Part shown: positions 1-17,980 of the stretch, piece after piece | Layout of the letters: each line of letters begins with the position of its first letter | Position numbering within the stretch: the first letter of the stretch is position 1 | DNA from: Fonticula alba ATCC 38817 | Lineage: Eukaryota; Protista; Nucleariida | Strand: one strand, 5' to 3' | DNA: 17,980 nt | NCBI GenBank assembly: GCA_000388065.2 | Contig: KB932210.1 | The notes under the pieces: generated by a model | What the model saw: only the letters and a program-made list of their open reading frames with translations | What the model was told of the DNA's origin: nothing | Databases searched by the model: none | Position numbers and translations under genes: made by a program

Positions 1-2
1 CG

Positions 3-3000
3 GCAGGCTGGTGGCCGGCCGCCCTGCTGGTGCTGCTCGCGGCTCTGGTCGCGGTGCCGGCGGTCCGGCCGGCCGCCGGGCCGGACCTCTTCCTCCACGC
101 CGGGCCGCTGCCCACGGCGGCCCTGACCCCGTCGACGGTCTTCGTCGCGGCGCCGGGGCTGCCCTCGCTGGCCCATGTCCCGGGGCTGGCCTGGTCCGTG
201 TCCCAGCACCGGCAGGCGGACCCCCTGGCCCCGGTGTCGGAGTGCCGGTGGGGGTCCTTCTTCGAGGGCAGCCCCTCGGCCCGGGTGGACTCCCCCCGGC
301 AGGCCTCCCCGCCGGGCCCCGCGTCGCTGATGTACCTCCCGGCGGCCGGGGCCCCGGGGCCGGTCCTGCTCCAGCACACCGACCAGTGGGTGGCCCTGCT
401 GGAGTCGCCGACCGAGCACCCGCTGCCCGGGTCGCACAACACCCTGCTGGCCGCGGTGGCCGGCTCCCCGGGGCAGGTGGACCTGCTGGGCATCGTCGGC
501 CAGCCGGGCCAGGCCCCGCACGCGGTCTTCCTGGCCACCCTGGAGGCCGGGGCCCTGCGCCCGGTGGCCGGGGCCCTGCCCCCGCTGAGCGCCGGCATCC
601 TCGCGGCCCCCGGGCCCGGGCGGACCATCTACCTGTCCGGCGACTCGACGCTCTACCATGTGGCCTTCCTCGGGGCCGGGTCGGCCGGCGTCAGCCAGCT
701 GGCCCTCGACGCCGAGGCCGTCCGCATGGCCTCCACGCGGGTGGTCTCCCCGGCCTCCGAGTGCCCGGGCGCCGCGGATCTCCTGCTCCTGCTGGCCGAC
801 CGGTCGGTCCTGCTGCTGCCCTGCCAGGCCGGCGGCCACACCTCGGGCCCGGCCATGGCCGGGCCCCTGCCGGCCGGGGCCTCCACCGAGGGGCGCTTCC
901 TGGCCCCGCCGGCGCCCTCCCTGCACGAGGCCACCGGGCACTTCTACTTCATGGAGCCCGCGCCCGAGGGCGGCCTGGCCGGGCTGTGGCACGCGGCCCC
1001 CCGGCAGCCCGGCCAGGGGTTCCTCTGGCGCCGGGTCATCCTGCCGGAGGCGGCCCTCTCGGCGACCGTGGGCTCGCTGCAGCTGGCCCGGCTGCGCACC
1101 CTGCCCGAGCCGCACCCCGGCCAGTGGACCCTGGTGGCCGATGGCCAGCTGGTCCTCTTCGACACCGAGGCCTTCGGCTGTGCCACCGACCCGAGCATCG
1201 TCTGTGACGGGCCGACCGAGAGCACCGGCTCCAGGCATGGCTGGGCGTGCGCTCCGGGGCGCGCCCGGTCGCCCTTCCTCTCGGCCGACCAGCTGTGCGC
1301 CGGGTGCGCCGACGGCTTCTTCCTGGACCGGCCGGCCGGTGCGTCCCCCGCCCCTGCGCCGCCGCCGCCGCCGCGGCTCCCGGTACCTGCCTCTCGCCGC
1401 CGCCCCCCCTGACCGTCCTCTCTCCCTCTCTCTCTCTCCGCCCCCCGCCGCCCTCCCCACCACCGCCTCCGCGCAGATGAGCCGCCCTTCGCCGCCCCGT
1501 CGCATGGCTGCCTGCCCTGCCCGCAGGAAAACTGCACGACCTGCACCGCCGAGCACTGCCTCGTGTGCGCGCAGGGCTTCTTGCCGGAGCCCAGCGGCCC
1601 CGGCGGCAGGACAGCCTGCGTGCCGGGCTGCTCGGCCGGCTTCGCCGAACACCCCGGCGCCTGCCTGCCCGATGCCTTCTCCCCGCCGGCGGCCACCTTC
1701 ACCCTCCCCGAGTGGGAGACCTTCCCCGGGCTGCCGACCGGCACCATCGTCACCGGCCTCGGGGAGACCCACCTGATGGTGGCCCCCGACAGTGGGGACC
1801 TGTTCATCCCGGCCCCGGACGCCTCGGCCACCTCGGCCGCCTCGGCCACCTCGCCGGCCCCCGGCACCCGGGTCCTGCTCTTCACCGACCTGGGCGAGAC
1901 GCTGCTGCTGCCGGCGGCCGACATCGCCCGGCCCGGCGCCCCGGCCCCGGTCGAGGTGGGCCTCCTGGCCCCGGGCCCGGGGGAGCCGGTGGTGGCCATG
2001 GCCGAGGCCGGGCCCTTCCGGCATGCCGGCCGCCTGGCCCTGGGCCTGGTCCTGTGCGACCGCCTGGGCCGGGCCTTCGAGGTGTGGCCCGGCTGCCCGG
2101 ATGCCGGCGGGCCCGGCTGCAGCCTGGCCAGCCCGCCGCCCCGGCGGGACCTGGCCCCGGGCCAGTGCCTCGGTGTCCGGCGCCTGGACCGGGGGCATGT
2201 GCTCCTGGTGACGCGCGACGACCAGGGCATCCTCCTGCGGGCCGACCCGGCGGCCGGGCAATTCGTCGGCCTCGGCTCGCGGGTCCTCGGCATGGCCACC
2301 CTGCCCGGGGGCCCGGTGCCGGCCCGGTCCTTCCTGTCGGGCCCGGGGTCCGGCACGTGGGAGGTGCTTTCTGCCAGCCACTCCGGGGTGTCGCTGCTGC
2401 CGGGGGCCCTGCCCGTGGGGGACTCCCGGCGGGAGGCCCTGCTCGGGCTCCTGGCCCCGGCCGCGGCCCCCATGGGCCCCTCGGTGCCGGTGCTGCTGGA
2501 CACCGGCTTCGGCGGCGCGCCGGCCGGCCAGTGGCCCCCCCTGCCGGAGCTGGTGCTCGTCCACACCGCCGGGCCCAGCCTCCAGGTGTCCCGGGCCCCG
2601 GGGGACATGCTGCCGGCCGGCCGGTCCATGGGGGTCCCCTCGGCCGGGCAGACGCTGGGCCCGATGCCCGGGCCGGTGGCCGACACGCCCGGCGGCCCGG
2701 GGCTCCTGGTCCAGCCGGTGTCGCTGCCCTGGCAGCAGCCGCACTACCCGGCCGGGCTGCTGCTCCTGGGCCGGACCTTCTTCGCCCTGGTGCCGCTCTA
2801 CTGCCCGGCCCCGCCGGGGGGGCCGTGCGTCTTCCTCCGGCCGACGGTGCTGCCCCTGTCGGCCCCGATGCATGTGCCGGACAGCGCGCCCAACTGGCAG
2901 CCGGCCATCATCCGGGCCCCCTCGGCCCCGGGGCACGTCCTGACCATGGTCACCTTCGCCGAGGCCGTCGGCCCGATCAGCGTCTCCCTGCAGGTGGCCT

Positions 3001-6000
3001 GCCCGGCCGGGGCATTTGGCCTTGCCTGCGAGCCCTGCCACGGGGCCTGCCGCGAGTGCACCGGCCCCGGGCCCGGGGACTGCACCGCCTGCACGCTGGC
3101 CCTGGCCTCGGCGCCGGACGAGTGCATGGCCGCCTGCCCGGCCGGGCTGCTGGCCGACCTCGACGCCGGCCGGTGCACCTGCGACACCGGGTGCCTCGAC
3201 TGCGAGGCGGACCCCCACCCGGCCGGCGCCGGGGGCTACCGGTGCACCGAATGCTCGGCCGGGTATTTGTTGGTCGACGACCCGGCCCAGCCCGGGCACT
3301 GCCTGCCCTGTGACCGAGCCTGCGCCGGGTGCACGGCCGCCGGCGACCCGGCCGCCTGCACGGCCTGCGCCGCCGGCTGGCTGCTCCACGCCGGGGCATG
3401 TGTGGATGTCTGTCCGGCCGGGCACTGGCCGGACCCGGGGTCGGCCCGGTGCGCTCCCTGCCTGGCCGAGTGCGCGACCTGCAGCGGGCCGGACAGCTGC
3501 ACCGGCTGCCCGGCCGGGCACCATGTCGGGCCGGACGGCCTGTGCCACCGGTGCGACCTGTCCTGCGCCGAGTGCCAGCAGGCCGGCAGCTGCACCGTCT
3601 GCCAGCCGGGGCTGGTGTTCCTCCAAGCCAATGCCCAAGTCCCGTCGCTGTGTGGCCCGACCTGCCTGCCGGGGCAATTCGCCGGGGCCACCCGGTGCAC
3701 CGCCTGCCACCGGTCGTGCGCCCTCTGCACCGGCGAGGCCACCCGGTGCCAGGTGTGCGCCGTGGAGTATGGCTGGGCCTCGGCGCCGGCGCCGGCCCCC
3801 GGGCCCCCGGCGGCCCCGTGCCTGCTCTGCGAGATGGGCTGCACCTCCTGCCTGGCCGGCCGGTGTCTCACCTGCGAGGAGAGCCTCTTCCTGACGCCGG
3901 AGCACGAGTGCTGGGCCTTCTGCATGCCGGGGTTCTACCCGAATGGGGAGTCCTGCCAGCCGTGCGACCCGAGCTGCGGCGAGTGCCGGGGCCCCGGCCT
4001 GGACGAGTGCCTCTCCTGCCCGATGGACCTGCTCTTCCAGGAGTCCCTCTACCCGCTGGGGACGTGCCAGTCCGGCTGCCCGGACGGGTACTTCCTCCAG
4101 GCCGACTCGCAAGAGTGCCTGCCCTGCCATGCGGCCTGCTCCCGGTGCAATGGGCCCTCCGAGGGGGACTGCTGGCAATGCCGGGGGGATGCCCTGCTGC
4201 AGGGGACCCATTGCGTGCAGGCCTGCGCCCCGGGGCATGTGGCCGTCGGCGACCGGTGCCTCCCCTGCCATGCCTCCTGCGCCGAGTGCACCGGGGTCTG
4301 GGCGAGCGAGTGCACCGCCTGCTCGGCGGGGCTGCTGCCCCTGCCGGCCGGCGGCCGGCCCGACCGGTGTGTGGCCGGCTGCCCGGTGGGCTACCACACC
4401 GGCCCGGATGGCTGCACCCGGTGCTCGGATGACCAGTGCGCCAGCTGCCCGGGCGAGGCGGCCGCCTGCGGGCTGTGCACCGGCTCCTGGCTGCTGGCCG
4501 GGCAGGCCTGCCTGCCGACCTGCCCGGCGGACTCCCTGCCCCAGGGCAATGTGTGCACCGTGTGCCATGACTCCTGCGAGGCTTGCTACGGCCCCGGGCC
4601 GGGCCACTGCCTGTCCTGCAGCGCGGCCTTCCCGCTGATGGTGGAGGGCCACTGCCGGGACGCCTGCCCGGCCGGGACCTTCCCGGATGCCGGGACCTGC
4701 CTGCCCTGCCATGGGCTCTGCTCGACCTGCCACGGCCCGGAGCCCGGCCACTGCGCCACCTGCCCGGCCGGCGGCCTGCTCCACGGGGGGTTCTGCCTGG
4801 CCGAGTGCCCGGCCGCCTTCTTCCCCCAGGCCGGGGCGTGCCACCCCTGCCAGGCATCCTGCGCCACGTGCGACAACCGGACCACCTGCGCCACCTGCCC
4901 CGAGGGGGAGCTCCTCCAGCCCGGGGGCACATGCGCCAAGACCTGCCCGGCGGGCTGGCATGGCTGCGCCCCGGACCCCCGGTGCCGGGCCTGCCCGGAG
5001 GGCTGCGCGGCATGTCGGTCGGTCGGCGGCACCTGCCAGCCGGAGTGCACCGCCTGCTCCGGCGGGCTGCTCCTGTCGGCCGGCCAGTGTGTGGCCCAGT
5101 GCGCCGGGGATGAGTATGTCGTGGCCGGGACCGGCACGTGCGCCGCCTGCAGCGCCGCCTGCCGGACCTGCCTCGCGGCGGCCGACAAGTGCACCTCCTG
5201 CCCGGCCGGCCGGCTGCTCCACCCCCCGGCCGGGGCCTGCCTGGATGTGTGTCCGCCGGGCTCGGCCCCGGCCGGGGGGACCTGCCTCGCGTGTGTCGCC
5301 GGCTGCGACCGGTGCGAGGCCGGCCCCGGCCAGGAGGGCTGCGATCCCAGCCGCGAGGGGTTCCTCTCGTGCCCGGAGATCGCCGGGTGCCTGCGCTGCG
5401 CCGGGGGCCTGCTGCTGCTGAATGGGGCCGCCTGTGTGGACCGCTGCCCGGGGGGCTTCTTCGCGGACGCCCGGGCGCCGGCCGGCCCGATGTGCCGGGC
5501 CTGCGACCCGGCATGCGCCGCCTGCTCCGGGCCCGGGCCGGATGGCTGCCTGGCCCCGCCGGGGTCGCGGGCGTCGCGCATCGGCCTGGCCGTCGGCCTG
5601 TCCATGGGCCTGCTGATCTTGCTGATCCTGCTGCTGCTGCTGGTGCTGCTGTGCGTCCGCCGGCGCCACAAGGCCCACCCGGTGGCCAAGGCCGCGGCCG
5701 ACGCCGAGGACGCCACCATGCTGAGCACCCTCCTGGAGCTGGTGGCCCTGCCCGGGGCCCTGGTGGTGGCGGCCGACGTGGACTTCCGGCCGCTGGAGGA
5801 GGAGGAGGAGGAGGAGGCGGCCCCCCCGGGCGCCGGGGGCCCGGCCAGTGTGTACTCGGCGCAGGCCGTCAGCCCGGCCGTGGCCGAGCGGCTGGCCTGC
5901 CCGGCCGTGGTGGCCATCAAGAAGCCCAAGTCCCACCCGATGCCGCCCACGCAGCAGGCCCTCTTCCACAATGAGGTCGCCCTGATGTGGCAGCTGCGCG

Positions 6001-6692
6001 GGCATGGCAACATCGTCCGGCTCTTCGGCTACAGCCACAGCCCGCCGGCCATCGTGATGGAGCGCTTCGACAGCGACCTGCTGACCCTGCTCCGGTCCGG
6101 GGTGCCCCTGTCGCCGGTGCACCTGGCCGACATCATCCACCAGTGGGCCACCGGGCTGGAGGCCATGCACGCCAGCGGCCTGGCCCATGGCGACCTGAGC
6201 CCGGCCAATGTCCTGGTCAGCCAGGGCCATGATGGGGCCTGGCGCGCGGCCCTCGGCCACCTGGGGGCCAGCCGCAACTTCGCGCCCGACCGGCCCTCGG
6301 CCCTCCTCGACACCATGCCGCCCGACCTGCATGCCCTGACCGTGTGCTATGCCGGGCCCGAGGTCATCGCCGCCTTCCACCAGGGCGCCCCCCTGGAGCC
6401 GGGGCTCCGTCCGCCGGCCGACATCTATGCCGCGGCGGTCATGCTCAATGAGTGCATCGCCCGGGCGGCCCCCTGGCCGGGCATGGGCCTGCCGGGGGTC
6501 ATGGCCGCCGTGCTGGCCGGCCAGCGCCCCGGCACCGACGCCCTGCCCCTGGCCGGGCCCTTCGCCGAGGCCCGGCACCTGATCGCCGAGGCCTGGCACG
6601 CGGAGGCCTCTCGCCGGCCGGATGCCGGGGTCTTCCGCCAGCGGTGCGCCGCCCTGCACGTGGCGGCCGGCGGCCCGGCCACGCCGCCCTGA
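3..6692 (+). CDS. Gene 1 (5'-partial): giant receptor-like TKL (pseudo)kinase with furin-like Cys-rich ectodomain; exons <3..1338 and 1477..6692
   Basis: Frame 3 is open from base 3 (AGWWPAALLVLLAALVAVPAVRP, signal-peptide-like; the ATG is presumably upstream of the window). A phase-1 intron 1339..1476 joins ...DRPA/D-EPPFAAPSHGCLPC and runs into the 1563..6692 ORF. Spliced length is 6552 nt, a multiple of 3. It contains CxxC-rich repeats, a hydrophobic TM followed by RRRHK, and kinase motifs VAIKK, NEVALMW, HGDLSPANV, GHLG, YAGPE, DIYAAAV. Confidence 0.9.
1339..1476 (+). other. Spliceosomal intron 1 of gene 1 (138 nt, phase 1)
   Basis: GTGCGT donor at 1339, CTGAC branch-like motif 1409-1413, (CT)-rich pyrimidine tract, CAG acceptor 1474-1476. 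Splicing removes the in-frame TGA at 1410-1412 and restores the frame. Confidence 0.88.
3000..5549 (+). repeat. Furin-like / growth-factor-receptor Cys-rich repeat region of gene 1 (~850 aa)
   Basis: Recurring C..C...C..C.GP....C..C..G..L..G.C...CP.G.(F/Y) pattern in translation, e.g. CLPCHGLCSTCHGPEPGHCATCPAGGLLHGGFCLAECPAAFF. Family assignment is by motif recognition. Confidence 0.85.
5580..5657 (+). other. Single transmembrane helix of gene 1
   Basis: IGLAVGLSMGLLILLILLLLLVLLCV followed by the basic stop-transfer sequence RRRHK. Confidence 0.9.
5781..6660 (+). other. Kinase-fold domain of gene 1, TKL-like, probably catalytically impaired
   Basis: Subdomain motifs in order: GAGGPASVY, VAIKK, HNEVALM, NIVRLFGY, HGDLSPANV (6186-), GHLG (His at 6258-6260), YAGPE, DIYAAAVML, PW, RP...W...RRP. 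Confidence 0.85.
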
Positions 6693-6906
6693 GCCCCCGG
6701 CCCCGGGCCCGCGCCATTCCCCCGTCGTCCGCCCGAGCGGCCTCTCTTCCCCCGAGCGGCCCGTACTTCCATGCGGTCGGCCCCCGCCTCGGCCACCGGG
6801 CGGCCCCATCCCAATAGAGCATTTCATGGAGAATGCCCCGGGCCCGGGCGGCGCCCCCATGCGCCGGAGGTTGTTGCGCGAGGGGCGGCGAGGGGGCGGG
6901 GGGGGG

Positions 6907-7342
6907 NNNNNNNNNNNNNNNNNNNNNNNNNNNNNNNNNNNNNNNNNNNNNNNNNNNNNNNNNNNNNNNNNNNNNNNNNNNNNNNNNNNNNNNNNNNNNN
7001 NNNNNNNNNNNNNNNNNNNNNNNNNNNNNNNNNNNNNNNNNNNNNNNNNNNNNNNNNNNNNNNNNNNNNNNNNNNNNNNNNNNNNNNNNNNNNNNNNNNN
7101 NNNNNNNNNNNNNNNNNNNNNNNNNNNNNNNNNNNNNNNNNNNNNNNNNNNNNNNNNNNNNNNNNNNNNNNNNNNNNNNNNNNNNNNNNNNNNNNNNNNN
7201 NNNNNNNNNNNNNNNNNNNNNNNNNNNNNNNNNNNNNNNNNNNNNNNNNNNNNNNNNNNNNNNNNNNNNNNNNNNNNNNNNNNNNNNNNNNNNNNNNNNN
7301 NNNNNNNNNNNNNNNNNNNNNNNNNNNNNNNNNNNNNNNNNN
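6907..7342. other. Assembly gap (436 N)
   Basis: Run of N between a G-rich tract (~6884-6906) and a C-rich tract (~7379-7428). Confidence 1.

Positions 7343-7393: not shown

Positions 7394-7428
<35 letters not shown>
7394..7428 (+). repeat. Poly(C) homopolymer (35 nt) upstream of the gene 2 start
   Basis: Read directly from the sequence. The length may be inexact next to a gap. Confidence 0.85.
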
Positions 7429-7429
<1 letters not shown>

Positions 7430-7471
7430 CCCCACCTCCCGCATCCCCACCCCCCGCACCCCGTGCACAGC

Positions 7472-8966
7472 ATGCCGCAGGTCGGCGCCTATGGCATAGT
7501 CCTGCTCTGGCTGCTGGCCCTGCTGCCGGCGGGGGCCTGGGGCGCCTCCCCTGTTGGGCCCCGGCCGGCCGGCCGGTCGGGCCCCGGCGCCGGTGCGCAG
7601 GCCCTCATCCTGGACGAGGCCCACCTCCAGCGCGCGCCCTTCCCCCTGTTTGAGCATGACGCCGAGTGGCATTTCCAGGTCGGGGAGTTTGTCCGCGACG
7701 AGCCAGCGAGCCTGGTTACCACGAGCCCGACCACCCGAGAGACTCGGCGCTACCAGTCGACCGCGGTCGATCTGGCCTCCTGGCCCGAGTCCCGCACCGG
7801 GACCCGCTTCAGCATGGACTCCGGACAGATCACCCTCCGGGCGCCCAGCAGCCAGAGCCCCATCACCCCGGGCGACATCTTTCCCATCCCCTTGGCCACT
7901 GGTGAAACCGGCCTCCTGGAGGCGACCCACGACCCGGTAGGGGACTCCCTGCTGATCACCTATGCCAGTGCCGTGGAAAGCAAACTGGACATCCAGGGGC
8001 GCCAAGTCCGGCTGCTGGCCATCCATGCCACCACCGCAACCAATACCCACGTCCTGGTGGCCAGCGACAGCGGCATGCTGGAGGTCGCCTCCATCGGCGG
8101 ATCCTCCGACATTGTCCCGGTTGTTGGCTCATACGGCACCGCGGGCGCCTTTGCCCCCCCCATGCGACAGGGCGACCCGCTGGCCGCCATCGCCGACTCG
8201 CAGGGCACCTTCCACGTGTGGACCCCGAACGCCTACTACACGGCGGTGTGGGAACCCCCGCAGTGGAGGCTGGTCAGTCAGCACCGCGACAGTGTGGTGC
8301 AGGTCCTGACCACACACATCCTGGACTCCGCAACCGAGAGCCGGATTATCCTGTACCGCGACCGGACGCTGGAGCTGTGCTATCACACCCTGACCGGGGC
8401 TTGCACCCTGCCGGTGACCACCACCCTGCCGGCGGAAGTCCCGCAGGACGGGCTGTTCATCAATGCCCCGGCCACCGAGTCTCGGGCGCCGCTCGGGTGG
8501 CTGATGTACGCCCCCCCCGGGGGGCACACCCTCTGGCGCATGGCTGCCCTGGAGAATGCCCAGCAGCTGTCCTGGCAGCCGCTCCGGCTGCCGGCCGGCA
8601 GCGAGCAGGTCGACTCCCTGCGCATGGTTCGCGTGTCCCTGGCCCTTGGCCACCCGCTGACCTGGGTCCCGGCCGGCCGGCACATGTACCTCGAGCCGGG
8701 GGACTTCCGCTGCCCGGGGGCGTCCGCCCAGCCGGATGTGTCCATCCAGTGCGGCAGCTCGGCCTCGAGCAACTGGAGCTGCGTCCCGGGCCGGGTGTTG
8801 GCGCCCTTCACCGTGCCGGGGCTCCTGTGTGGCGGGTGCGCTCGCGCCTGGTCCGCCACCGACCCGGCCAACCTGTCCAGTACGTTGGGCGCCGCGGGCC
8901 GGTGCCCCTGATGCTGCCTCCCTCTTACCCCCGCCCCCTCCCCCGGCTAACCAATGCCCCCTGCTC

Positions 8967-9049
<83 letters not shown>

Positions 9050-12000
9050 CCCCGCGGCCTGGCCCTCGGCCGGCCTGGCCATCGGACGCCGCCTCAGGCG
9101 GCTGCTCGCCCTGCACCGGCCAGTGCGATGTGTGTGCCGGCACCGGGCCCACGGACGATTGTCTGGTTTGCCGCTCGGGGTTCGTGCTGTCGGTCGACCC
9201 GGCCACCGGCCGGGCGTCATGCGCCAGCAGCTGCCCGGACCAGCAGCCCGCCCTCAGCGGTGTGTGCCCCGGTGCCAGCGGGGTCGGGGCCCTGGACATG
9301 GCCGCCACCTTGACCAGCGTCCTGGTCACCATGCCCGCCCTGCCGGACCCCATCCCTGTGGCCTTCCTCGCCAGGACCTCCCTGCGGGTGGACCCCCAAA
9401 GCAACGAGGTCCAGCTTGTGGGCCCCATGGCCGACGAGCCGGAACGCTGGCTGGCCTTCCCCTCGGCCGAGGTGGATTTGCCGCCGCTGCTCCTGGACCC
9501 GGCGGACCTGCTGGCCGGGACGTCGGTCTCCGCCAGCCGGGCCGACTTCCTGCCGACGCGCGCCCCGGTGGCCGCCTACGCCGAGTCGTCGGTGGCCGCG
9601 ACGGCCACCGGCCGCCAGATGCTGGCCCTCCTGTGCGAAGCGTCCTCCGGCCAACTGATGCGCGTCACCTTTTCCCAAGCCACCGCCGCCCCGTCCGAGC
9701 TTCAGGTCGACAGGGCGAATGTGGGCCTTCTCAGCGACTGCAGGCGCCTGGAGCGCCTCGGCCCGGACCTGGTGGCCCTCATGGACAAAGACCACTCCCA
9801 GGTGCACCTTTTCCGCATGGACCCGGCCAACGGGCTGCTGGCCCACGCGGCCCTGGCCGACACCACCACCCGGCCGGCCCTCCTGCCGCTCGAGTGGCCG
9901 GCCATCCTGCGCCTGGGGCCCGACCTCTCGTCGATCCACCCGCTGGACATGCTCCTGGCCAATGACCCTCGAGCCACGCCGCGCCGGGAGGCCCTCGGCG
10001 GGGTCACCGGCTCCTGGCACTCGACGGTCCTGCAGCCGGGGGCCGGCCGCCCGGGCGAGCTGGTCCTCTCGGCGTTGGTGCCCTCCGGCGGGACCTCCCA
10101 CCGGTGGCTGGCCCAGCACATCCCGCAGGGCGGCCGCCTGCAGGGCCGGACCACCGACCTCCCCCGGGTGGAGTACGACCTGGGCTCGGTGTCGGACCCG
10201 GGCTCCGGCAAGTACCAGGTCCTGGCGGCCCCGGTCCTCGGCCAGGCCGGCGAGGTCGCCACCGCCCTGGTGGTCCTGACCTCGAAGGAGGTCGGGGTGG
10301 CGGCGCTGCACTGTCCGGCCGGGCGGATTGCCTGCCGGCTCCGGCCGGCGGTCTTCCGGCCGCTGGCCCGGCCGCTCGGCAGCCCGGACTCCCTGGTGGT
10401 CGTGGAGCTGCCGGCTCCGATGGGCCCCGGCGGCGGGGCCCATGCCCATGGCGGCTCGCCGGGCGGCCTGTGGATGGCCCTGGCCCTGGTCTCGGGCCTG
10501 GCCGGCGGGGGCCCCATCTTCCGGCTGGACATCGACCTCATGCCCCCCTGCCCAGAGGGGACATTCACGCCGGACTGCCGGGCCTGTGTGGCCGGCTGCG
10601 TCCAGTGCACCGGGCCCAACCCCCGCGATTGTGTCCGGTGTGCCGCCTTCCTGCCAAGCCAGCCGGAAGCCTGCCTGGCGGCCTGCCCGGCCGGCATGGC
10701 CCCCGGGCCGGATGGCGCCTGCGGCTGCCACCCCCTTTGCACAAATTGCCACCACTCGACCGATCGCTACGAGTGCCTGGCATGCGATGCCGGGCATGTG
10801 CCCGGCCCGCCGGACCCGGCCGACCCCGGCGGCCTGGGCCCGGACCGGTGCCTCGCCTGCCGGGCGAATTGCCACCGGTGCACGGCCCCCGGGCCGGACG
10901 GCCCCTGCGACCTGTGCAGTGTGGGCTTCTTCCTGCAGCCGGGCAGCGGCTGTGTGGCCACCTGCCCGGCGGGCATGTGGCCGGATGCCGACAACCGCGT
11001 CTGCGCCCCCTGCCCCGGGCCATGCACCTCCTGCTCCTCGGCCAGCGACTGCACCGCCTGTGCCGCCGGGCACTTCCTCAATGCCAGCCGCATGTGCCAG
11101 CCCTGTGACAGCTCCTGCACCGCCTGCACCGACAGGGCCACCTGCACCATCTGCCGGCCGGGGATGATCTTCCTGTCGCCCGTTCCCCAGCAGGCGTCCC
11201 TCTGCGGCAGCACCTGCCCCCCGGGCGAGTATGTCGGCGCCGGCCGGTGCGCCGCGTGCGATGGGTCGTGTGAGCTGTGCGCCGGCGGGCCGGACCGGTG
11301 CCGGGTGTGTGCGGCGGGCTTCCGCTGGGGCGCGACCCCGGGCCCCGGCGGCACCGGCACGTGCGTCGCCTGTGAGCCGGGGTGCGCCTCCTGCACGAGC
11401 GCCGCATGTTTGTCCTGCGAGGCGGGCCTCCTGCTCACGGCGGCCGGCGCATGTGTCAGCGCCTGCCCAGCCGGGTCGTTCAGCAACGGCGAGTCGTGCC
11501 AGCCGTGCGACATTAGTTGCGCCGCCTGCGCCGACGGCCAGCCGGACCAGTGCACGGGCTGTGCCGCCGGGCTGGAACTTGTCGAGGTCAGCCCCGGTGT
11601 CGGCACCTGCGTGTCCGGCTGCTCGGAGGGCCAGTACCGCGCGGGGGCCGAGTGCCTGCCCTGCGACGCGGCCTGCGCCACGTGCAACGGCCCCACGGAC
11701 AAGGACTGCTGGCGGTGTGCCTCCGGCGTCCTGCAGGGCGGCGACTGCGTGCAGGCCTGCGCCGCCAGGCATGTGGCCGTGGGCGACCGGTGCCTGCCGT
11801 GCCATGTCTCCTGCGCCGAGTGCATGGGCACTCGGAGCACCGAGTGCCTGCCGGACTGCGCACCCGACTTGCTGGCCCTGCCGGCCGGGCAGTCGCCCAC
11901 GCGCTGCGTGCCGGCCTGCCCGGCCGGATACAACACCTCAATGAGCGGCTGCCGCCAGTGCACGGAGCACTGCGCCAGCTGCCCGGAGTCGAACGACACG

Positions 12001-15000
12001 TGCGCCCTGTGCGAGCGCGGGTGGCTGCTGGCCAGCCCGGACTGCGTGACCGAGTGCCCGGCCGGGTCGATGGCCCAGGGCGGGCTGTGCGCCACCTGCC
12101 ACGCCACCTGCGCCACATGCTTCGGCCCGGCGCCCGAGCACTGCCTGTCATGCGCCCCGGGCACGCCGCTCATGCTGGACACCAGCTGCGTGGCCGCCTG
12201 CCCCGGCACGCACTTCGCCGCCGGCGGGGCCCTCTGCCTTCCCTGCAGCCCGTACTGCGGCCGGTGCTCCGGGCCGGGGCGCGACCAGTGCACGGCCTGC
12301 CCGGCGGACCGGGTGCTCGTGCCGGCCGGCGAATGCCTGGGCGCCTGCCCGGCCGGGCAGTATGCCGACGCCGGCCGCGTGTGTCGCCCGTGCGGGCCGA
12401 CCTGCACCGCCTGCTCCGGCGGGCCAGACCGCTGCACCGCCTGCCAGGCGCCCCGGCTATTGCACGCCGGGGCCTGTGTGGCCGGCTGCCCGGCGGGCCA
12501 CTTCCCATGCGCCCCCTCGAGCCAGTGCGTCGCCTGTCCCCCCGGCTGCGCCAGCTGCGCGGCCGCCCCGGCGACCGGCGCCCCCTGCACGGCCAGCTGC
12601 ACCGCATGCGGCCCTGGGCTCGCGCTGTCCCTGTCGGGGGCCTGCCAGGCGGCCTGCCCGGCCGGGGAGTACCTCCCGGCCGGCTCGTCCACCTGCGAGG
12701 CCTGCGCGCCGGACTGCGCCACCTGCCACGGCCGGGCCGATCGGTGCACGGCATGCCGCAACTCGGCGGCCTGGCTGATGGCCGACAGCGGGCTCTGCGC
12801 CAGTGCCTGCCCCGGGGCCGGCTTCGCCATGCTCCCGGACGGCCGGGCCTGCCTCCCGTGCCAGGCCGGCTGCGAGCACTGCCCGGCCCCCGACGGGGCC
12901 GGCCCCTGCACCATCGCCCCGACCGGGGCCCTTGCCTGCCCGGGGGTGACCGCCTGCCACCGGTGCATGGCCGGCTACCTGCTGCTGGCCGGCAGCCAGT
13001 GCGTGGCCACCTGCCCGGCCAATACCTTCCCCGCGTGGGATGCCCCCCTGCCCGTGTGCGGCCCCTGCCACCCCAAGTGCGCGGGCACGTGCACCGGCCC
13101 GGAGCAGGCGGACTGCTCCGGGTCCGCCGGCGGCTCCCCCGGCCGGCGGGACCTCGGTGCGTGCCGGCGCCGGCGCCCCCCTTCCTCCTGCCCCGCTGTG
13201 CTTTGGCTGTGGACTAACGTGCTGCCCGGTCGCCCTCCATGGCCAGCCCTCGGCCTGGGCCTCGGCCTGGGGCTGCTGCTGCTGCTGCTGCTCCTGGCCC
13301 TGGCCATCTTCCTGCTGCTGCGCCTGCGCCGGGCCCGCCGGCCCAAGGATGTGGTCCGTCGGAAACCCCCGGGCCCCTCTGCCGTCTCTGCTCGCCCACC
13401 TCCTCCGCCTCTCCTGCGGTCCCCCTCCCGACCCAGTCCGCCGAGTCCGACGAAAGTGCGCCGTCCCCCCCCCCTCCCCGAGTCGGCCGGCTGGCATGCG
13501 GCCCCTCTGTCTTCTTTCCTCTGTGTGCCCCCAAACAACTCCCCGCCCCCCGCTGCCACGCTCTCTGACTCTCCTTCTCTCCCTCTCGCCGGCAGACTCC
13601 ACGGTGCTCAACACCATCATCGGTCCGCTGCCCCCGCCGCGTGCTCCCCCTCCGTGCCCCGTTGCTCTCGCCCCCCGCCCGGCCGCCTCTCACCCATTCC
13701 CCCCCCCCCCTTCCGCCCCGCCGGCGCGACCACAGAGATGTCCCTCCCCGGCGCCATGCAGGTGGACCTGGCGGCGGACTTCACCCCGATCGATGGCCCC
13801 CTCGGCGCGGGGGCCCAGGCGAGCGTCTTCGCTGCGCGCGCCGTCGGCCCCGGCATCTCCACGCGCCTCGGCTGCCCGGACACCGTGGCCATCAAGCAGA
13901 TGAAGGGTACGCCCATCGGCCTGGCCACGCGCCCAGCCGGTGCTCGGCCGCCGGCCCCTGTCTCACTGACGGACCCCCGCCCCCCCCCCCCTTCCCCCTG
14001 CCAGCCGCCGCCATGAAGCCCACACAGGTGGCCCTCTTCCAGAATGAAATCGCCCTCATGTGGTACGCCCCCGGCTTGTCCCCGCGCCCGCGCCAGCCCG
14101 ACGCACGGCTCTGACAGACCCCCCTGCATGGGGCGCAGGCTCCTCCGCGAGCACCCGGCCATCGTCCGGCTGTACGGCTACAGCGACCAGCCGCCGGCCA
14201 TCATCATGCACCGGTACCAGACGGACCTGGCCACGCTGCTGCACTCGGAGGTGGCCCTCTCGCTGGGCGCCCTGCTGGACATCGCCCAGCAGTGGGCCTC
14301 CGGGCTGGAGGCCATGCACGCCAATGGCGTGGTCCACTGCGACCTGAAGCCGGCCAATGTCTTTGTCAGCCAGCAGCCGGCCGGGTCATGGACGGCGGCC
14401 CTCGGCGACCTGGGCACCTCGCAGAACCTGAGCACCGACCGGTCCTCGGCCCTGGTGACCACGGCCCCGGAGCTGAATGCCATGACCGCGCGCTATGCCG
14501 CGCCCGAGGTCCTGGTGGCCTTCCGGCGCCGGCGCCCGCTGGAGCCAAGCCACCTCTCCGCGGCGGACATCTTCTCGGCGGCCGTCCTGCTTTGGGAGAG
14601 CCTCTCCCGGGCCATCCCCTGGGAAGGTGCGTCCGCGGGGCCAGCTGCCCGGAGCCGGGGGGCGGGGCGGGGGGGCGGGAGACACGGGGCGCCGCATGCG
14701 CTGCAAGCTTCTTCTCTTTCTTTCGCACAACCCCACACTTGCTGACCTCCATCGGGCGTGTTGCCTCCCACCCCCCTTGCCCCTCGTGCCCGCCATGCTG
14801 GCCATGATGATGACACTGGCGGCGGCGGGGGCGGCGACGACGACGACACCAACGGCGAATGGGATAGCATGCAACTTTGAGCAGATCTCCGCGGCCGTGC
14901 AAGCCGGCGACCGGCCGGACGTCTCGACCGCCGTGGCCCCGCTGGGCGCCCAGGCTCCCAACCTCGGCCAGATGGCCGCCGACCTCCTGGCCCGGGCCTG

Positions 15001-15085
15001 GAACCAGGACCCGCTGGCCCGCCCGCCGGCCGCCACCTTCCGCCAGGTGTGCGCCTCGATGGCGGTCTTCTCGTCAGGGCAGTAG
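7472..15085 (+). CDS. Gene 2: giant receptor-like non-RD TKL Ser/Thr kinase, 9 exons (7472..8879, 9098..13156, 13247..13353, 13437..13455, 13596..13622, 13736..13906, 14005..14062, 14139..14626, 14868..15085), 2184 aa
   Basis: ATG 7472 starts MPQVGAYGIVLLWLLALLPAGAWG (signal peptide). All eight introns are GT..AG and phase-compatible, and the total is 6555 nt. The spliced kinase is collinear with the intronless gene 1 kinase at the junctions (KQMK/AAAMKPTQVALFQNEIALMW vs KKPKSHPMPPTQQALFHNEVALMW; PWEACNFEQISAAVQAGDRP vs PWPGMGLPGVMAAVLAGQRP). Motifs: LGAGAQASVF, VAIKQ, HCDLKPAN, GDLG, YAAPE, DIFS. Stop TAG 15083-15085. Confidence 0.88.
8880..9097 (+). other. Intron 1 of gene 2 (218 nt, phase 1)
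   Basis: GTACGT donor 8880, GCTAAC branch-like motif 8946-8951, CAG 9095-9097 is the first AG after it. The acceptor is somewhat uncertain because the intron contains a long (GT)n. Confidence 0.75.
8969..9044. repeat. (GT)38 microsatellite inside intron 1 of gene 2
   Basis: 76 nt of perfect GT repeat read directly. Confidence 0.97.
10549..13116 (+). repeat. Furin-like Cys-rich repeat region of gene 2 (~856 aa)
   Basis: Same repeat pattern as gene 1 and largely collinear with it (e.g. CTICRPGMIFLSPVPQQASLCGSTCPPGEY vs CTVCQPGLVFLQANAQVPSLCGPTCLPGQF). Confidence 0.85.
13157..13246 (+). other. Intron 2 of gene 2 (90 nt, phase 1)
   Basis: GTGCGT donor, GACTAAC branch motif 13212-13218, CAG 13244-13246. 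Splicing places the TM helix directly after RRDL. Confidence 0.88.
13247..13320 (+). other. Transmembrane helix of gene 2 (in its own exon, 13247..13353)
   Basis: ALGLGLGLGLLLLLLLLALAIFLLL followed by RLRRARRPK. Confidence 0.9.
13354..13436 (+). other. Intron 3 of gene 2 (83 nt, phase 0)
   Basis: GTCCGT donor, pyrimidine-rich body, CAG 13434-13436. Confidence 0.72.
13437..13455 (+). CDS. 19-nt micro-exon 4 of gene 2 (SAESDE + A)
   Basis: Flanked by CAG and GTGCGC. It is needed to reconcile the phase-0 donor at 13354 with the phase-1 acceptor at 13595, giving KDVSAESDENSTVLNTIIE, which matches gene 1 KAAADAEDATMLSTLLE. Confidence 0.72.
13456..13595 (+). other. Intron 4 of gene 2 (140 nt, phase 1)
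   Basis: GTGCGC donor, CTGAC at 13565-13569, CT-rich tract, CAG 13593-13595. Confidence 0.75.
13596..13622 (+). CDS. 27-nt micro-exon 5 of gene 2 (..STVLNTII..)
   Basis: CAG and GTCCGC flanks. The translation matches gene 1 ATMLSTLL. Confidence 0.82.
13623..13735 (+). other. Intron 5 of gene 2 (113 nt, phase 1)
   Basis: GTCCGC donor, poly-C tract, CAG 13733-13735. G|AG reconstitutes the Glu of IIEMSLPG. Confidence 0.82.
13907..14004 (+). other. Intron 6 of gene 2 (98 nt, phase 1)
   Basis: GTACGC donor, ACTGAC branch-like motif 13965-13970, poly-C, CAG 14002-14004. Confidence 0.9.
14063..14138 (+). other. Intron 7 of gene 2 (76 nt, phase 2)
   Basis: GTACGC donor, CTGAC 14111-14115, CAG 14136-14138. 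TG|G restores the Trp of ALMW-LLREH. Confidence 0.9.
14627..14867 (+). other. Intron 8 of gene 2 (241 nt, phase 1)
   Basis: GTGCGT donor, GCTGAC 14741-14746, TAG 14865-14867. The spliced product aligns gap-free to gene 1. Confidence 0.82.
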
Positions 15086-15284
15086 GCCGCACCCGGCTGG
15101 GCCAGGCCGGCGCCCCGGCATCGCCGCCGCCCCGCGGCCATGGTGCATGGACGGGCGGGCCGCGCTGGCCCCGTCAGCACGCGCAAATACACGCACTCAC
15201 ACGCACACACGCACGCACGCACCGGAATACGCCTCGATGGCTGGCAGCCCGCCCGGCCGGTCGGCGGCCCGTACGCGCGACCAT

Positions 15285-15877
15285 CGGGGGAGGGGCACTG
15301 TCGCGAACCGGCGCATGCCCGGAACTGTGGTTGCCGGACTTCGGAAAGGGGCACCTTGGCACACACGGGGCTGGCCAGACGCCCAAGGGGCCGGCCGGGT
15401 CTTGGAGCAATGCCCGCCCCGTTTCACGACGCTCTTCCGATCTCGGGGGAGGGGCACTGTCGCGAACCGGCGCATGCCCGGAACTGTGGTTGCCGGACTT
15501 CGGAAAGGGGCACCTTGGCACACACGGGGCTGGCCAGACGCCCAAGGGGCCGGCCGGGTCTTGGAGCAATGCCCGCCCCGTTTGCCAATAATACCTCGGC
15601 ATTAATAAAGGCCCCTTTCACGCGGGAGGGCCCCACACGCCTGAACCGATGATAGCCGGCCGTCTGGCGCGCTGGCTTCTTCTTGGCGCTCCCCGGCGGG
15701 ACCAGGTGCCACAGGGCCGACGGTCACGCCGGCCGCCCTGGTCGACCCTCGAGATCGGAAGAGCGTCGTGACCGATGATAGCCGGCCGTCTGGCGCGCTG
15801 GCTTCTTCTTGGCGCTCCCCGGCGGGACCAGGTGCCACAGGGCCGACGGTCACGCCGGCCGCCCTGGTCGACCCTCG
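15285..15877. other. Assembly artefact: adapter-flanked sequencing fragment causing two false direct repeats
   Basis: CACGACGCTCTTCCGATCT at 15425-15443 and its reverse complement AGATCGGAAGAGCGTCGTG at 15752-15770 are Illumina paired-end adapter sequence. Exact duplications: 15285-15424 = 15444-15583 (140 nt) and 15645-15751 = 15771-15877 (107 nt). Confidence 0.95.
15604..15609 (+). promoter_or_regulatory. Candidate AATAAA polyadenylation signal for gene 2
   Basis: AATAAA within a short AT-rich patch (CAATAATAC..ATTAATAAAG) in otherwise very GC-rich DNA downstream of the stop. Use of this signal in this organism is unverified. Confidence 0.45.
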
Positions 15878-16121: not shown

Positions 16122-16171
16122 NNNNNNNNNNNNNNNNNNNNNNNNNNNNNNNNNNNNNNNNNNNNNNNNNN
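16122..16171. other. Assembly gap (50 N)
   Basis: Run of N downstream of a G11 run (16092-16102) and about 50 nt before the gene 3 ATG. Confidence 1.
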
Positions 16172-17533: not shown

Positions 17534-17980
17534 GTGCGTGTCCAGGCCCTCGGGCCTCCTTGTGCTGGCCTGCTCCCCCTGGCCCTGCCAAGATGCCTGT
17601 CGCGCTCCATATGCTTCCTTTCTGTCACCGGCGCCTATTTTCCCTGTTCTCTCCCTCCCGCCCCCCCTCTCTCCGCCTGTTGTGCCTGCGCTGATCGTCT
17701 TGCCTGTGGTGGTTGTCTTGCCTGCGCTGATCGTCTTGCCTGTGGTGGTTGTCTTGCCTGTGGTGATTGTCTTGCCTGTGGTGATTGTCTTGCCTGTGGT
17801 GATTGTCTTGACTGTGGTGATTGTCTTGCCTGTGGTGATTGTCTTGCCTGTGGTGATTGTCTTGCCTGTGGTGATTGTCTTACCTGTCCTGATCGTCTTA
17901 CCTGTTCTGATCGTCTTACCTGCACCGATCGTCTTACCTGTTCTGATTGTCTTACCTGCACTGATTGTCTTACCTGCACC
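17534..17980 (+). other. Intron 1 of gene 3 (probable; runs off the window end)
   Basis: GTGCGT donor and pyrimidine-rich tract at ~17605-17680. No AG occurs after 17592 on the + strand. Confidence 0.7.
17691..17978. repeat. 18-bp minisatellite, 16 complete units (consensus (G/C)TGAT(T/C)GTCTT(G/A)CCTG(T/C)N), probably continuing past the window
   Basis: Units read directly, e.g. GTGATTGTCTTGCCTGTG at 17763, 17781, 17817, 17835, 17853, with variants CTGATCGTCTTACCTGTT/GCA toward the 3' end. Confidence 0.95.

What the first reader, a model, noticed from the sequence alone, without database searches (positions are those of the whole stretch)
6186..6362. Gene 1 is a probable receptor pseudokinase lying next to an intact paralogue: possible sensor/executor pair
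Gene 1 has His (CAC, 6258-6260) where gene 2 has the Mg-binding DFG-equivalent Asp (GAC, 14407-14409). It also has Ser (AGC, 6198-6200) for the catalytic-loop Lys (HGDLSPAN vs HCDLKPAN) and GPE for APE. The frame is intact over ~2180 codons and the other kinase motifs (VAIK, alphaC Glu, catalytic Asp/Asn) are retained, so this does not look like general decay. Loss of the DFG Asp usually abolishes phosphotransfer (established). Active/inactive receptor pairs are known (ErbB3 with ErbB2, plant BIR2 with BAK1, IRAK-M). Inference: gene 1 is an allosteric partner, scaffold or decoy for gene 2-type receptors.
Basis: partly seen in the sequence, partly recalled or inferred. Interest (0 to 1): 0.75.

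Follow-up and report, generated by a model that had tools for sequence, protein, structure and literature searches.

The report
Fonticula receptor with a dead-looking kinase
One gene in a large family of surface receptor kinases of the amoeba Fonticula alba has lost the magnesium-binding residue of its kinase yet stays intact, so it is probably a receptor pseudokinase, an ordinary kind of protein; nothing ties it to its neighbour as a working pair.

Summary
Gene 1 is annotated as a Fonticula alba serine/threonine kinase of 2074 aa. It reads LGHLG where 50 of 51 informative paralogues read DLG or DFG, and HGDLSPAN where they read HxDLKxxN.

His (CAC 6258-6260) is present in the source run and in contigs of three other samples.

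The Ser codon varies between samples. All three other samples carry AGG (Arg) at 6198-6200. GPE also occurs in five motif-intact paralogues, so it tells nothing.

The gene is otherwise sound:
- It has the same two-exon structure as its intact clade-mates.
- It has no frameshift or stop.
- The kinase fold is modelled with confidence (pLDDT 91).

Its kinase domain evolves about twice as fast as that of intact relatives. Its ectodomain does not. Strain variants lean synonymous (7:5).

It therefore fits the sequence definition of a pseudokinase. Whether the dead domain is still under selection is suggested but not shown, and I obtained no RNA data.

The sensor/executor pairing with gene 2 is not supported:
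- Gene 2 belongs to another kinase clade.
- Its head is only 26% identical to gene 1's.
- Adjacency is what a tandem array gives.

The family has one other pseudokinase-like member, P0046. An unchecked earlier first-reader note of this scan (s1-065607) describes a receptor pseudokinase on another piece of this genome; it may be the same gene. Verdict: a new member of a known kind.

The parts
3..1338 (+). Gene 1, exon 1. Holds the end of the signal peptide and the first part of the variable head. The 5' end is cut off by an assembly gap upstream of the window.
   Evidence: Translation. Exact match to P0001 residues 1-336 from window position 330. All 9671 bases upstream are N in L001.
1339..1476 (+). 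Gene 1's only intron (phase 1, GT..AG, 138 nt).
   Evidence: P0001 joins FFLDRPA to DEPPF. The donor GTGCGT and the acceptor CAG were read directly. P0002 and P0008 have the same two-exon structure.
1477..6692 (+). Gene 1, exon 2. Holds the rest of the head, the Cys-rich stalk (from about 3000), the transmembrane helix, the kinase domain and the stop codon.
   Evidence: Pfam VSP (PF03302, 6.7e-13) and GF_recep_IV hits in the stalk.
5580..5657 (+). Transmembrane helix IGLAVGLSMGLLILLILLLLLVLLCV, followed by RRRHK.
   Evidence: Read from the translation. It aligns with the same segment in all paralogues.
5715..6689 (+). Juxtamembrane motif plus the kinase (pseudokinase) domain of gene 1, with no intron.
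   Evidence: Pfam Pkinase 1.1e-19 (71 bits, cut-off 31.7) and PK_Tyr_Ser-Thr 9e-17. AlphaFold2 model with pLDDT 91.4 and pTM 0.90. Foldseek TM 0.64-0.73 to Fes, FGFR, RET, Src and BRAF.
5796..5816 (+). Glu7 low-complexity insert just before the Gly-rich loop (PGAGGPASV, 5826-5852). It is specific to gene 1.
   Evidence: Alignment. pLDDT is about 54 over this block.
6186..6209 (+). Catalytic loop HGDLSPAN. The Asp and the Asn are kept. The Lys place is Ser (AGC 6198-6200) in the reference and Arg (AGG) in three other samples.
6255..6266 (+). GHLG in place of GDLG. His (CAC 6258-6260) stands where the Mg-binding DFG Asp should be.
   Evidence: Unchanged in runs X1 to X4.
6354..6362 (+). GPE in place of APE. 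This is not diagnostic.
   Evidence: Five motif-intact paralogues have the same.
7472..15085 (+). Gene 2 (P0033, 2184 aa), an intact paralogue with 8 exons. Its kinase exons are 13735-13905, 14004-14063, 14140-14625 and 14867-15085. All catalytic motifs are present (LGAGAQASV, VAIK, HCDLKPAN, DLG, APE).

Best explanation
Gene 1 encodes a full-length single-pass surface receptor: a variable head, a furin/VSP-like cysteine-rich stalk, a transmembrane helix and a kinase fold. It belongs to a family found here only in Fonticula.

Its kinase domain has lost the Mg-binding DFG aspartate (now His) and the catalytic-loop lysine (Arg in most samples, Ser in the sequenced strain). It is therefore a pseudokinase by the sequence definition, and it most likely cannot transfer phosphate at a useful rate. 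The loss of these residues is shown. The loss of activity is inferred from established kinase chemistry.

The fold, the VAIK Lys, the alphaC Glu, the HxD Asp and the Asn are kept. I infer that the protein still works as a receptor whose inner domain acts without catalysis. The likely ways are:
- pairing side by side with catalytically active family members at the membrane, as an allosteric partner or as a substrate;
- acting as a decoy that soaks up ligand or partner.

The partner is unknown, and nothing singles out gene 2.
For: Motif loss and alignment.

Independent samples: His is fixed in four runs. Three of them are independent of the assembly.

The gene is intact:
- Its two-exon structure is identical to that of the intact P0002 and P0008.
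- It has no frameshift and ends where its paralogues end.
- The kinase fold is modelled at pLDDT 91 and matches solved kinases.

The relaxation is specific to the kinase domain:
- The kinase end branch is 0.68, against 0.15 for P0002. The ectodomain end branches are 1.35 and 1.26.
- In Tajima tests the kinase ratio is 1.3-2.7, and 5 of 8 tests give p<0.05. The ectodomain ratio is 0.97-1.21.
- Branch omega for the kinase is 0.83, against 0.42 and 0.52 in the intact relatives.
- Gene 1 departs at 16 of 112 highly conserved columns. Clade-mates depart at 0 to 5.

Not free drift:
- Neutrality over all of the branch is rejected at P 2e-8, and over 69% of it at P 3e-4.
- Strain variants are 7 synonymous to 5 non-synonymous (pN/pS about 0.26-0.32, one-sided p 0.02-0.05). 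In the kinase they are 4 to 2.

The catalytic-loop residue still toggles between Arg and Ser among strains. That fits a site which no longer matters for catalysis.
Against: - I obtained no RNA or protein evidence. All the runs I laid are DNA contigs.
- The kinase branch omega of 0.83 has a bootstrap range of 0.56-1.35, which includes 1.
- Neutral drift over the last 30% or so of the branch is compatible with the data. Selection on the dead domain after its inactivation is therefore not shown.
- The polymorphism counts are tiny and come from contigs of 2-6x depth.
- Some kinases without the DFG Asp still bind or use ATP.
- The 70 bases at 6072-6142 are shared with paralogues. No contig bridges them, so the join of the two lobes rests on the reference assembly. 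Both halves are nearest to the same clade.
Confidence: 0.55

Rival explanations
1. The kinase domain is in early decay. It was inactivated fairly recently and now drifts. The receptor is either on its way to becoming a pseudogene or survives only for its ectodomain, with the inner domain as a passenger.
For: - Kinase branch omega is 0.83 (0.56-1.35). That is as high as in the fast-evolving stalk and head of the same gene.
- Gene 1 departs at 16 of 112 highly conserved columns.
- The Arg/Ser difference between samples lies on a catalytic position.
- Three conserved Ser/Thr of the activation segment are lost, and a poly-Glu insert has appeared.
- Neutral drift over the last 30% or so of the branch cannot be excluded.
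- I have no expression data.
Against: - There is no stop or frameshift in about 2183 codons. The only indels in the kinase region are in frame.
- Strain variants lean synonymous, 4 to 2 in the kinase.
- The ectodomain evolves at the family's usual rate.
- His is fixed in four samples.
- Neutrality over most of the branch is rejected.
Confidence: 0.27
2. The kinase is atypical but still active. His at the DFG place, with Arg at the Lys place in most strains, supports nucleotide binding and slow or metal-independent phosphotransfer.
For: - VAIK Lys, alphaC Glu, HxD Asp, Asn and a Gly-rich loop are all kept.
- The review PMC7586955 reports metal-independent nucleotide binding by EphB6, which has RLG at this place. 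Putting Asp back there lowered that binding.
- The abstract of PMC9403797 describes a plant pseudokinase, ILK1, with confirmed protein kinase activity.
Against: - The DFG Asp is kept in 50 of 51 paralogues and the Lys in 49 of 51. The family's chemistry is therefore canonical.
- Two catalytic residues are gone at once.
- The Lys place is not even fixed within the species.
- The domain's rate has doubled.
Confidence: 0.12
3. One reading: gene 1 and gene 2 form a dedicated pseudokinase/kinase (sensor/executor) pair kept together in the genome.
For: - The two genes are adjacent and on the same strand, about 780 bases apart as assembled. A gap of unknown true size lies between them.
- Gene 2 has all the catalytic motifs.
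Against: - Gene 2 lies outside gene 1's kinase clade.
- The heads are 26% identical and the kinase halves 55% and 49%.
- Gene 1's closest relative, P0002, lies about 36 kb away on the same contig.
- At least 16 family members lie on this 619-kb contig.
- P0046, the only other pseudokinase-like member, also simply sits inside an array.
Confidence: 0.06

Closest known systems
Receptor pseudokinases of animals (HER3/ErbB3, EphB6, EphA10, ROR, RYK, PTK7)
   Same: - A single-pass receptor with a cysteine-rich (furin-like) ectodomain.
- A complete kinase fold that lacks a catalytic residue.
- It arose by duplication inside a family of active receptors.
- EphB6 likewise has a basic residue at the DFG place (RLG; PMC7586955).
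   Different: - It is not a tyrosine kinase. The family's catalytic loop is the Ser/Thr type, HxDLKxxN, and Fonticula is reported to have no tyrosine kinases (PMC4342544).
- No orthology: no close relatives turned up outside F. alba.
- No partner, ligand or expression is known.
Plant receptor-like pseudokinases (BIR2 with BAK1, NFR5, DRIK1)
   Same: - A member of a large, lineage-specific, tandemly expanded family of Ser/Thr-type receptor kinases.
- Degraded catalytic residues in an otherwise intact gene.
- Presumed to act through active relatives.
   Different: - The origin is independent and the ectodomain differs (unknown head plus furin/VSP-like repeats, not LRR or LysM).
- Foldseek's best matches are animal TK and RAF structures at 18-24% identity.
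- No functional data exist.
P0046, a second pseudokinase-like member of the same Fonticula family
   Same: - The same receptor architecture.
- It also lies in a tandem array between intact members.
- It has a long kinase branch, 1.52.
   Different: - It was inactivated by another route. The catalytic Asp is His, the Lys is Gly and the Asn is Lys (AHCHFGPDKIL), while the DFG Asp is kept.
- It belongs to a different clade.

Membership tests
Eukaryotic protein kinase fold (Pfam PF00069 / PF07714) | Profile match above the curated cut-off, and a bilobal fold. | tested here: met
   PF00069 scores 71.3 bits (cut-off 31.7) and PF07714 61.7 bits (cut-off 23.1). The model has pLDDT 91.4. TM is 0.64-0.73 to solved kinases.
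Pseudokinase (sequence definition) | Lacks at least one of the VAIK Lys, the HRD Asp and the DFG Asp. | tested here: met
   The DFG Asp is His. The VAIK Lys and the HxD Asp are present. The definition is as worded in the abstract of PMC13519141 and in PMC7586955.
Pseudokinase (biochemical definition) | No phosphotransfer activity. | not testable with these tools
   This needs an in vitro assay of the recombinant domain.
Pseudokinase kept for a function | Purifying selection on the dead domain, and expression. | tested here: inconclusive
   Strain variants in the kinase are 4 synonymous to 2 non-synonymous (p 0.05-0.08). Branch omega is 0.83 (0.56-1.35). Full-branch neutrality is rejected, but recent drift is not. 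I obtained no RNA runs.
Receptor kinase architecture | Signal peptide, ectodomain, one transmembrane helix and a cytoplasmic kinase. | tested here: met
   A hydrophobic N-terminal stretch is seen at the window start, although the start codon lies in the gap. Pfam VSP scores 48.7 bits (cut-off 31.4) and there is a GF_recep_IV hit. The transmembrane helix is at 5580-5657 and the kinase at 5715-6689.
Dedicated kinase/pseudokinase co-receptor pair (ErbB2/ErbB3, BAK1/BIR2 type) | A specific physical and functional partnership. | not testable with these tools
   This needs co-immunoprecipitation or genetics.
   There are two pseudokinase-like members among about 50. Both sit in tandem arrays where every neighbour is a family member. 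Gene 2 is in another clade and its head is 26% identical.
Tyrosine kinase group | Catalytic loop HRDLAARN or HRDLRAAN. | tested here: not met
   The family consensus is AHCDLKPGNVF. Suga et al. found no tyrosine kinases in Fonticula (PMC4342544).
Processed (retrocopied) pseudogene | All introns lost and the frame disabled. | tested here: not met
   The 5' intron is kept. The same two-exon structure is found in the intact P0002 and P0008. The frame is intact.

The most novel reading that the evidence does not exclude
In a receptor-kinase family found here only in Fonticula, a close amoeboid relative of fungi that lacks tyrosine kinases, a kinase-dead receptor may have arisen independently and been kept. 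It would act like HER3 or BIR2, as a non-catalytic partner or decoy of active relatives, and might bind nucleotide through the basic His/Arg pair much as EphB6 does. Its catalytic loop still differs between wild strains (Arg or Ser).
Probability: 0.35. Interest if true: 0.5.

Novelty: new member of a known kind. Interest (0 to 1): 0.3.

Why it matters
Pseudokinases inside receptor families are well known in animals and plants. One more, in a protist, is no surprise.

The modest value lies in three points:
- It would be a further independent case of an expanding receptor-kinase family producing kinase-dead members, here on the fungal side of the opisthokonts.
- Independent environmental samples give a first view of variation within the species at a former catalytic site.
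- The F. alba receptor family does not seem to be described in the papers I could search. This gene and P0046 are natural negative controls for any future biochemical work on that family.

Tried and rejected
- **RNA evidence.** The one run search returned only DNA-type contig runs, so I could not test expression.
- **Missing kinase cores in P0049, P0050 and P0052.** I first took these for further dead members. For P0050 the missing core is an assembly gap. I did not check the other two, and I count none of the three.
- **GPE as a sign of inactivity.** Rejected, because five intact paralogues have it.
- **HGD as a sign of inactivity.** Rejected, because P0008, P0016 and P0037 have it.
- **Retrocopy origin of the intronless kinase region.** Rejected, because intact clade-mates share the structure.
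- **Assembly or sequencing error at the two codons.** Rejected for His, which is the same in four runs. For Ser, the reference differs from the other samples.
- **P0003 as outgroup in the rate tests.** It gave confounded results, because its ectodomain groups inside the clade. I used P0012 instead.
- **Absolute dN/dS.** GC3 is 0.89-0.96, which depresses dS. I relied only on comparisons between branches.
- **tRNA scan of the window.** Nothing found.
- **Paper PMC6997932.** Not held.
- **Joining exons.** I searched them exon by exon and took the spliced protein from the database record P0033.

Full report
**What the window is.** The window is very GC-rich (about 0.77 in coding parts). It holds three same-strand genes for giant single-pass receptors. 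Word searches identify gene 1 as an annotated Fonticula alba protein, P0001 (2074 aa, 'serine/threonine protein kinase', contig KB932210.1, 619 kb). Gene 2 is P0033 (2184 aa). Gene 3 is the start of a fused model, P0035. Each protein has these parts:
- a variable head of about 850 residues with no Pfam match;
- a cysteine-rich stalk (Pfam VSP 6.7e-13, plus a GF_recep_IV hit);
- a transmembrane helix;
- a Pkinase domain.

The window contains N runs at 6907-7342 and 16122-16171. The 9.7 kb upstream of the window are all N, so the start codon of gene 1 is missing.

**The observation.**
- BLASTP between the kinase piece of gene 1 and the main kinase exon of gene 2 gives 57% identity.
- A phmmer alignment to solved MAP kinases places His 6258-6260 on the DFG Asp and Ser 6198-6200 on the Lys of HRDLKxxN.
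- The Gly-rich loop, VAIK, the alphaC Glu, the HxD Asp and the Asn are kept.
- The in-frame stop near 1500 lies inside a phase-1 GT..AG intron at 1339-1476. The spliced reading has about 2183 codons.

**Independent samples.** I laid contigs of four public runs on 1300-6900. X1 is from 2012 and is probably the source of the assembly. It matches the window exactly. Three other samples carry nearly the same gene, differing by a few bases per thousand: X2 (a soil metagenome), X3 ('organism B', 2025) and X4 (a sediment metagenome).
- None of the four shows any change at 6258-6260, so the His is real and shared.
- At 6200 all three other samples read G at full depth. Their codon is AGG (Arg), and their catalytic loop is HGDLRPAN.
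- The paralogues have AAG (Lys). The simplest path is AAG to AGG to AGC. On that path the Ser of the sequenced strain is a recent further change at a site that had already lost its Lys.

**Family survey.** Two word searches returned 54 F. alba relatives and no eukaryote other than F. alba. I aligned their kinase regions.
- The DFG Asp is present in 50 of the 51 models that cover it. Gene 1 is the exception.
- The catalytic-loop Lys is missing only in gene 1 and in P0046.
- P0046 reads AHCHFGPDKIL: the catalytic Asp, the Lys and the Asn are all replaced. This stands in an uninterrupted exon of the assembly, so it is a second pseudokinase-like member that arose by another route.
- Three models lack the kinase core. 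For P0050 this is an assembly gap. I did not check the other two and count none of them.
- GPE occurs in five motif-intact members and HGD in three. Neither is informative.

**Is gene 1 a sound gene?**
- Gene 1, P0002 and P0008 share one gene structure: a single 5' intron, then one huge exon running through stalk, membrane helix and kinase.
- The absence of gene 2's 3' introns is therefore a trait of the clade. It is not a sign of retrocopying.
- The kinase alignment shows only in-frame differences and the same C-terminal end as the paralogues.
- AlphaFold2, run with the family alignment, gives a confident bilobal kinase (pLDDT 91.4, pTM 0.90). Only the poly-Glu insert before the Gly-rich loop and the activation segment are less sure.
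- Foldseek matches Fes, FGFR, RET, Src and BRAF at TM 0.64-0.73 and 16-24% identity.
- The catalytic loop is of the Ser/Thr type, and Fonticula is reported to have no tyrosine kinases (PMC4342544).

**Rates.** In a kinase tree of 40 members, gene 1 sits in a 100%-supported clade of 12 with P0002-P0011 and P0037. Gene 2 lies outside it.

| Measure | Gene 1 | Comparison |
|---|---|---|
| Kinase end branch | 0.68 | P0002 0.15; clade-mates roughly 0.3 |
| Ectodomain end branch | 1.35 | P0002 1.26 |
| Unique changes, kinase (Tajima, outgroup P0012) | 1.3-2.7 times each clade-mate | p<0.05 in 5 of 8 tests |
| Unique changes, ectodomain (same test) | 0.97-1.21 times | none significant |
| Apparent branch omega, kinase | 0.83 (0.56-1.35) | P0002 0.42, P0008 0.52 |
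| Apparent branch omega, stalk | 0.75 | P0002 0.63, P0008 0.45 |
| Apparent branch omega, head | 1.12 | P0002 0.83, P0008 0.87 |
| Departures at columns at least 90% conserved | 16 of 112 | clade-mates 0 to 5 |

The omega values come from a three-taxon Nei-Gojobori decomposition. GC3 is 0.89-0.96, so absolute values are inflated and only the comparisons between branches count. The kinase domain of gene 1 has thus lost about half of the extra constraint that marks active kinase domains. The rest of the gene behaves like its relatives.

**Is the dead domain still under selection?** The evidence is mixed.
- Neutral drift over the whole gene 1 branch would have changed about 38% of residues. At highly conserved columns only 14% are changed (P about 2e-8).
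- Drift over 69% of the branch is what a simple two-phase model needs to reach omega 0.83. That is also rejected (P 3e-4).
- Drift over the last 30% is compatible with the data.
- Among the strain differences that I judged real, 7 are synonymous and 5 are not. That gives pN/pS of about 0.26-0.32, with one-sided p of 0.02-0.05 depending on transition bias.
- In the kinase the count is 4 to 2, with p of 0.05-0.08.
- These counts are small and come from contigs of low depth.
- I obtained no RNA data. The single run search returned only DNA-type runs.

I therefore rate 'kept, non-catalytic receptor' above 'early decay', but not by a wide margin.

**The pair idea.** Nothing supports a special tie to gene 2.
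- Gene 2 is in a different kinase clade.
- Its head is 26% identical to gene 1's. That matches any distant member, whereas clade-mates are 30-40% identical.
- The two halves of its kinase domain are 55% and 49% identical to gene 1's, below the clade-mates' 55-65%.
- Gene 1's nearest relative, P0002, lies about 36 kb upstream on the same contig.
- This contig alone carries at least 16 family members, so an intact neighbour is the rule.
- P0046 also has intact neighbours, for the same trivial reason.
- With two dead members among about 50, the family shows no repeated pseudokinase/kinase unit.
- About a tenth of receptor tyrosine kinases are pseudokinases, according to the abstract of PMC13259870, so the share seen here is unremarkable.

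**Mechanism, as far as it goes.**
- Shown: two residues of canonical phosphotransfer chemistry are lost, the fold is retained, and the gene is intact.
- Inferred from established kinase biochemistry: little or no catalytic activity.
- Inferred by analogy with HER3, EphB6 and BIR2: signalling or damping through active relatives.
- Speculative: nucleotide binding through the basic His/Arg pair. EphB6 has RLG at this place and binds nucleotide without metal (PMC7586955).

**Caveat on the assembly.** The conserved 70 bases at 6072-6142 are shared with paralogues and are not bridged by any contig. Both halves of the domain are nearest to the same clade, which fits a correct join. The assembly does contain artefacts nearby, namely Illumina adapter remnants at 15424-15443 and 15752-15770.

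**Earlier notes of this scan.** They named the organism and the family before I confirmed both myself. One unchecked first-reader note describes another 'receptor pseudokinase embedded among active paralogs' on another piece of this genome. It may be P0046.

**Verdict.** 'Pseudokinase' is supported by the sequence definition. The specific pair model is not supported. This is a new member of a known kind, of modest interest.

Noticed in passing
window 15284-15877: Illumina adapter remnants stand inside the assembly: CACGACGCTCTTCCGATCT at 15424-15443 and AGATCGGAAGAGCGTCGTG at 15752-15770. Each lies between two 100%-identical direct copies (141 nt and 107 nt). These are probably assembly artefacts in the spacer between gene 2 and gene 3.
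   Followed up: partly
L002 10001-18489 (P0046, contig KB932205.1): A second receptor pseudokinase of the family. Its catalytic loop reads AHCHFGPDKIL (Asp to His, Lys to Gly, Asn to Lys), with DLA for DLG and a degenerate activation segment. It has a very long kinase branch (1.52) and intact family members on both sides.
   Followed up: partly
window 1339-1476 and 7472-15085; L004, L002: Gene 1, P0002 and P0008 share a two-exon structure with an uninterrupted kinase region. Gene 2 has seven introns, six of them in the membrane and kinase part. The intron loss is therefore a trait of the clade.
   Followed up: yes
window 1-3000 and matching parts of P0002 and P0008: The apparent omega of the head domain is about 0.8-1.1 on all three branches. 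The heads evolve almost neutrally or under diversifying selection, while the stalks (0.45-0.75) and the active kinases (0.4-0.5) are more constrained.
   Followed up: partly
window 11245-12366 compared with the gene 3 model P0035; L003 15729-15959 compared with P0002: Stretches of the stalk of gene 2 are identical in the gene 3 model. The kinase N-lobe of P0050 is 96% identical to that of P0002. This points to recent duplication or gene conversion between family members.
   Followed up: no
window 6907-7342, 16122-16171; L001 1-9671: Assembly gaps flank gene 1 on both sides and cut off its 5' end. The annotated model P0001 therefore starts at an internal Met (window 330), although a signal-peptide-like stretch is visible at window 3-80.
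   Followed up: yes
window 7394-7455, 8969-9049, 17683-17976: There is a poly-C tract just upstream of gene 2, a (GT)40 microsatellite inside gene 2's first intron, and an array of 16 copies of an 18-nt unit at the end of the window.
   Followed up: no
window 6568 and 4221, 4516, 4872: Non-synonymous differences between the reference and the other samples: E to G at 6568 in all three other samples, plus A to T, P to Q and D to H in the stalk.
   Followed up: partly
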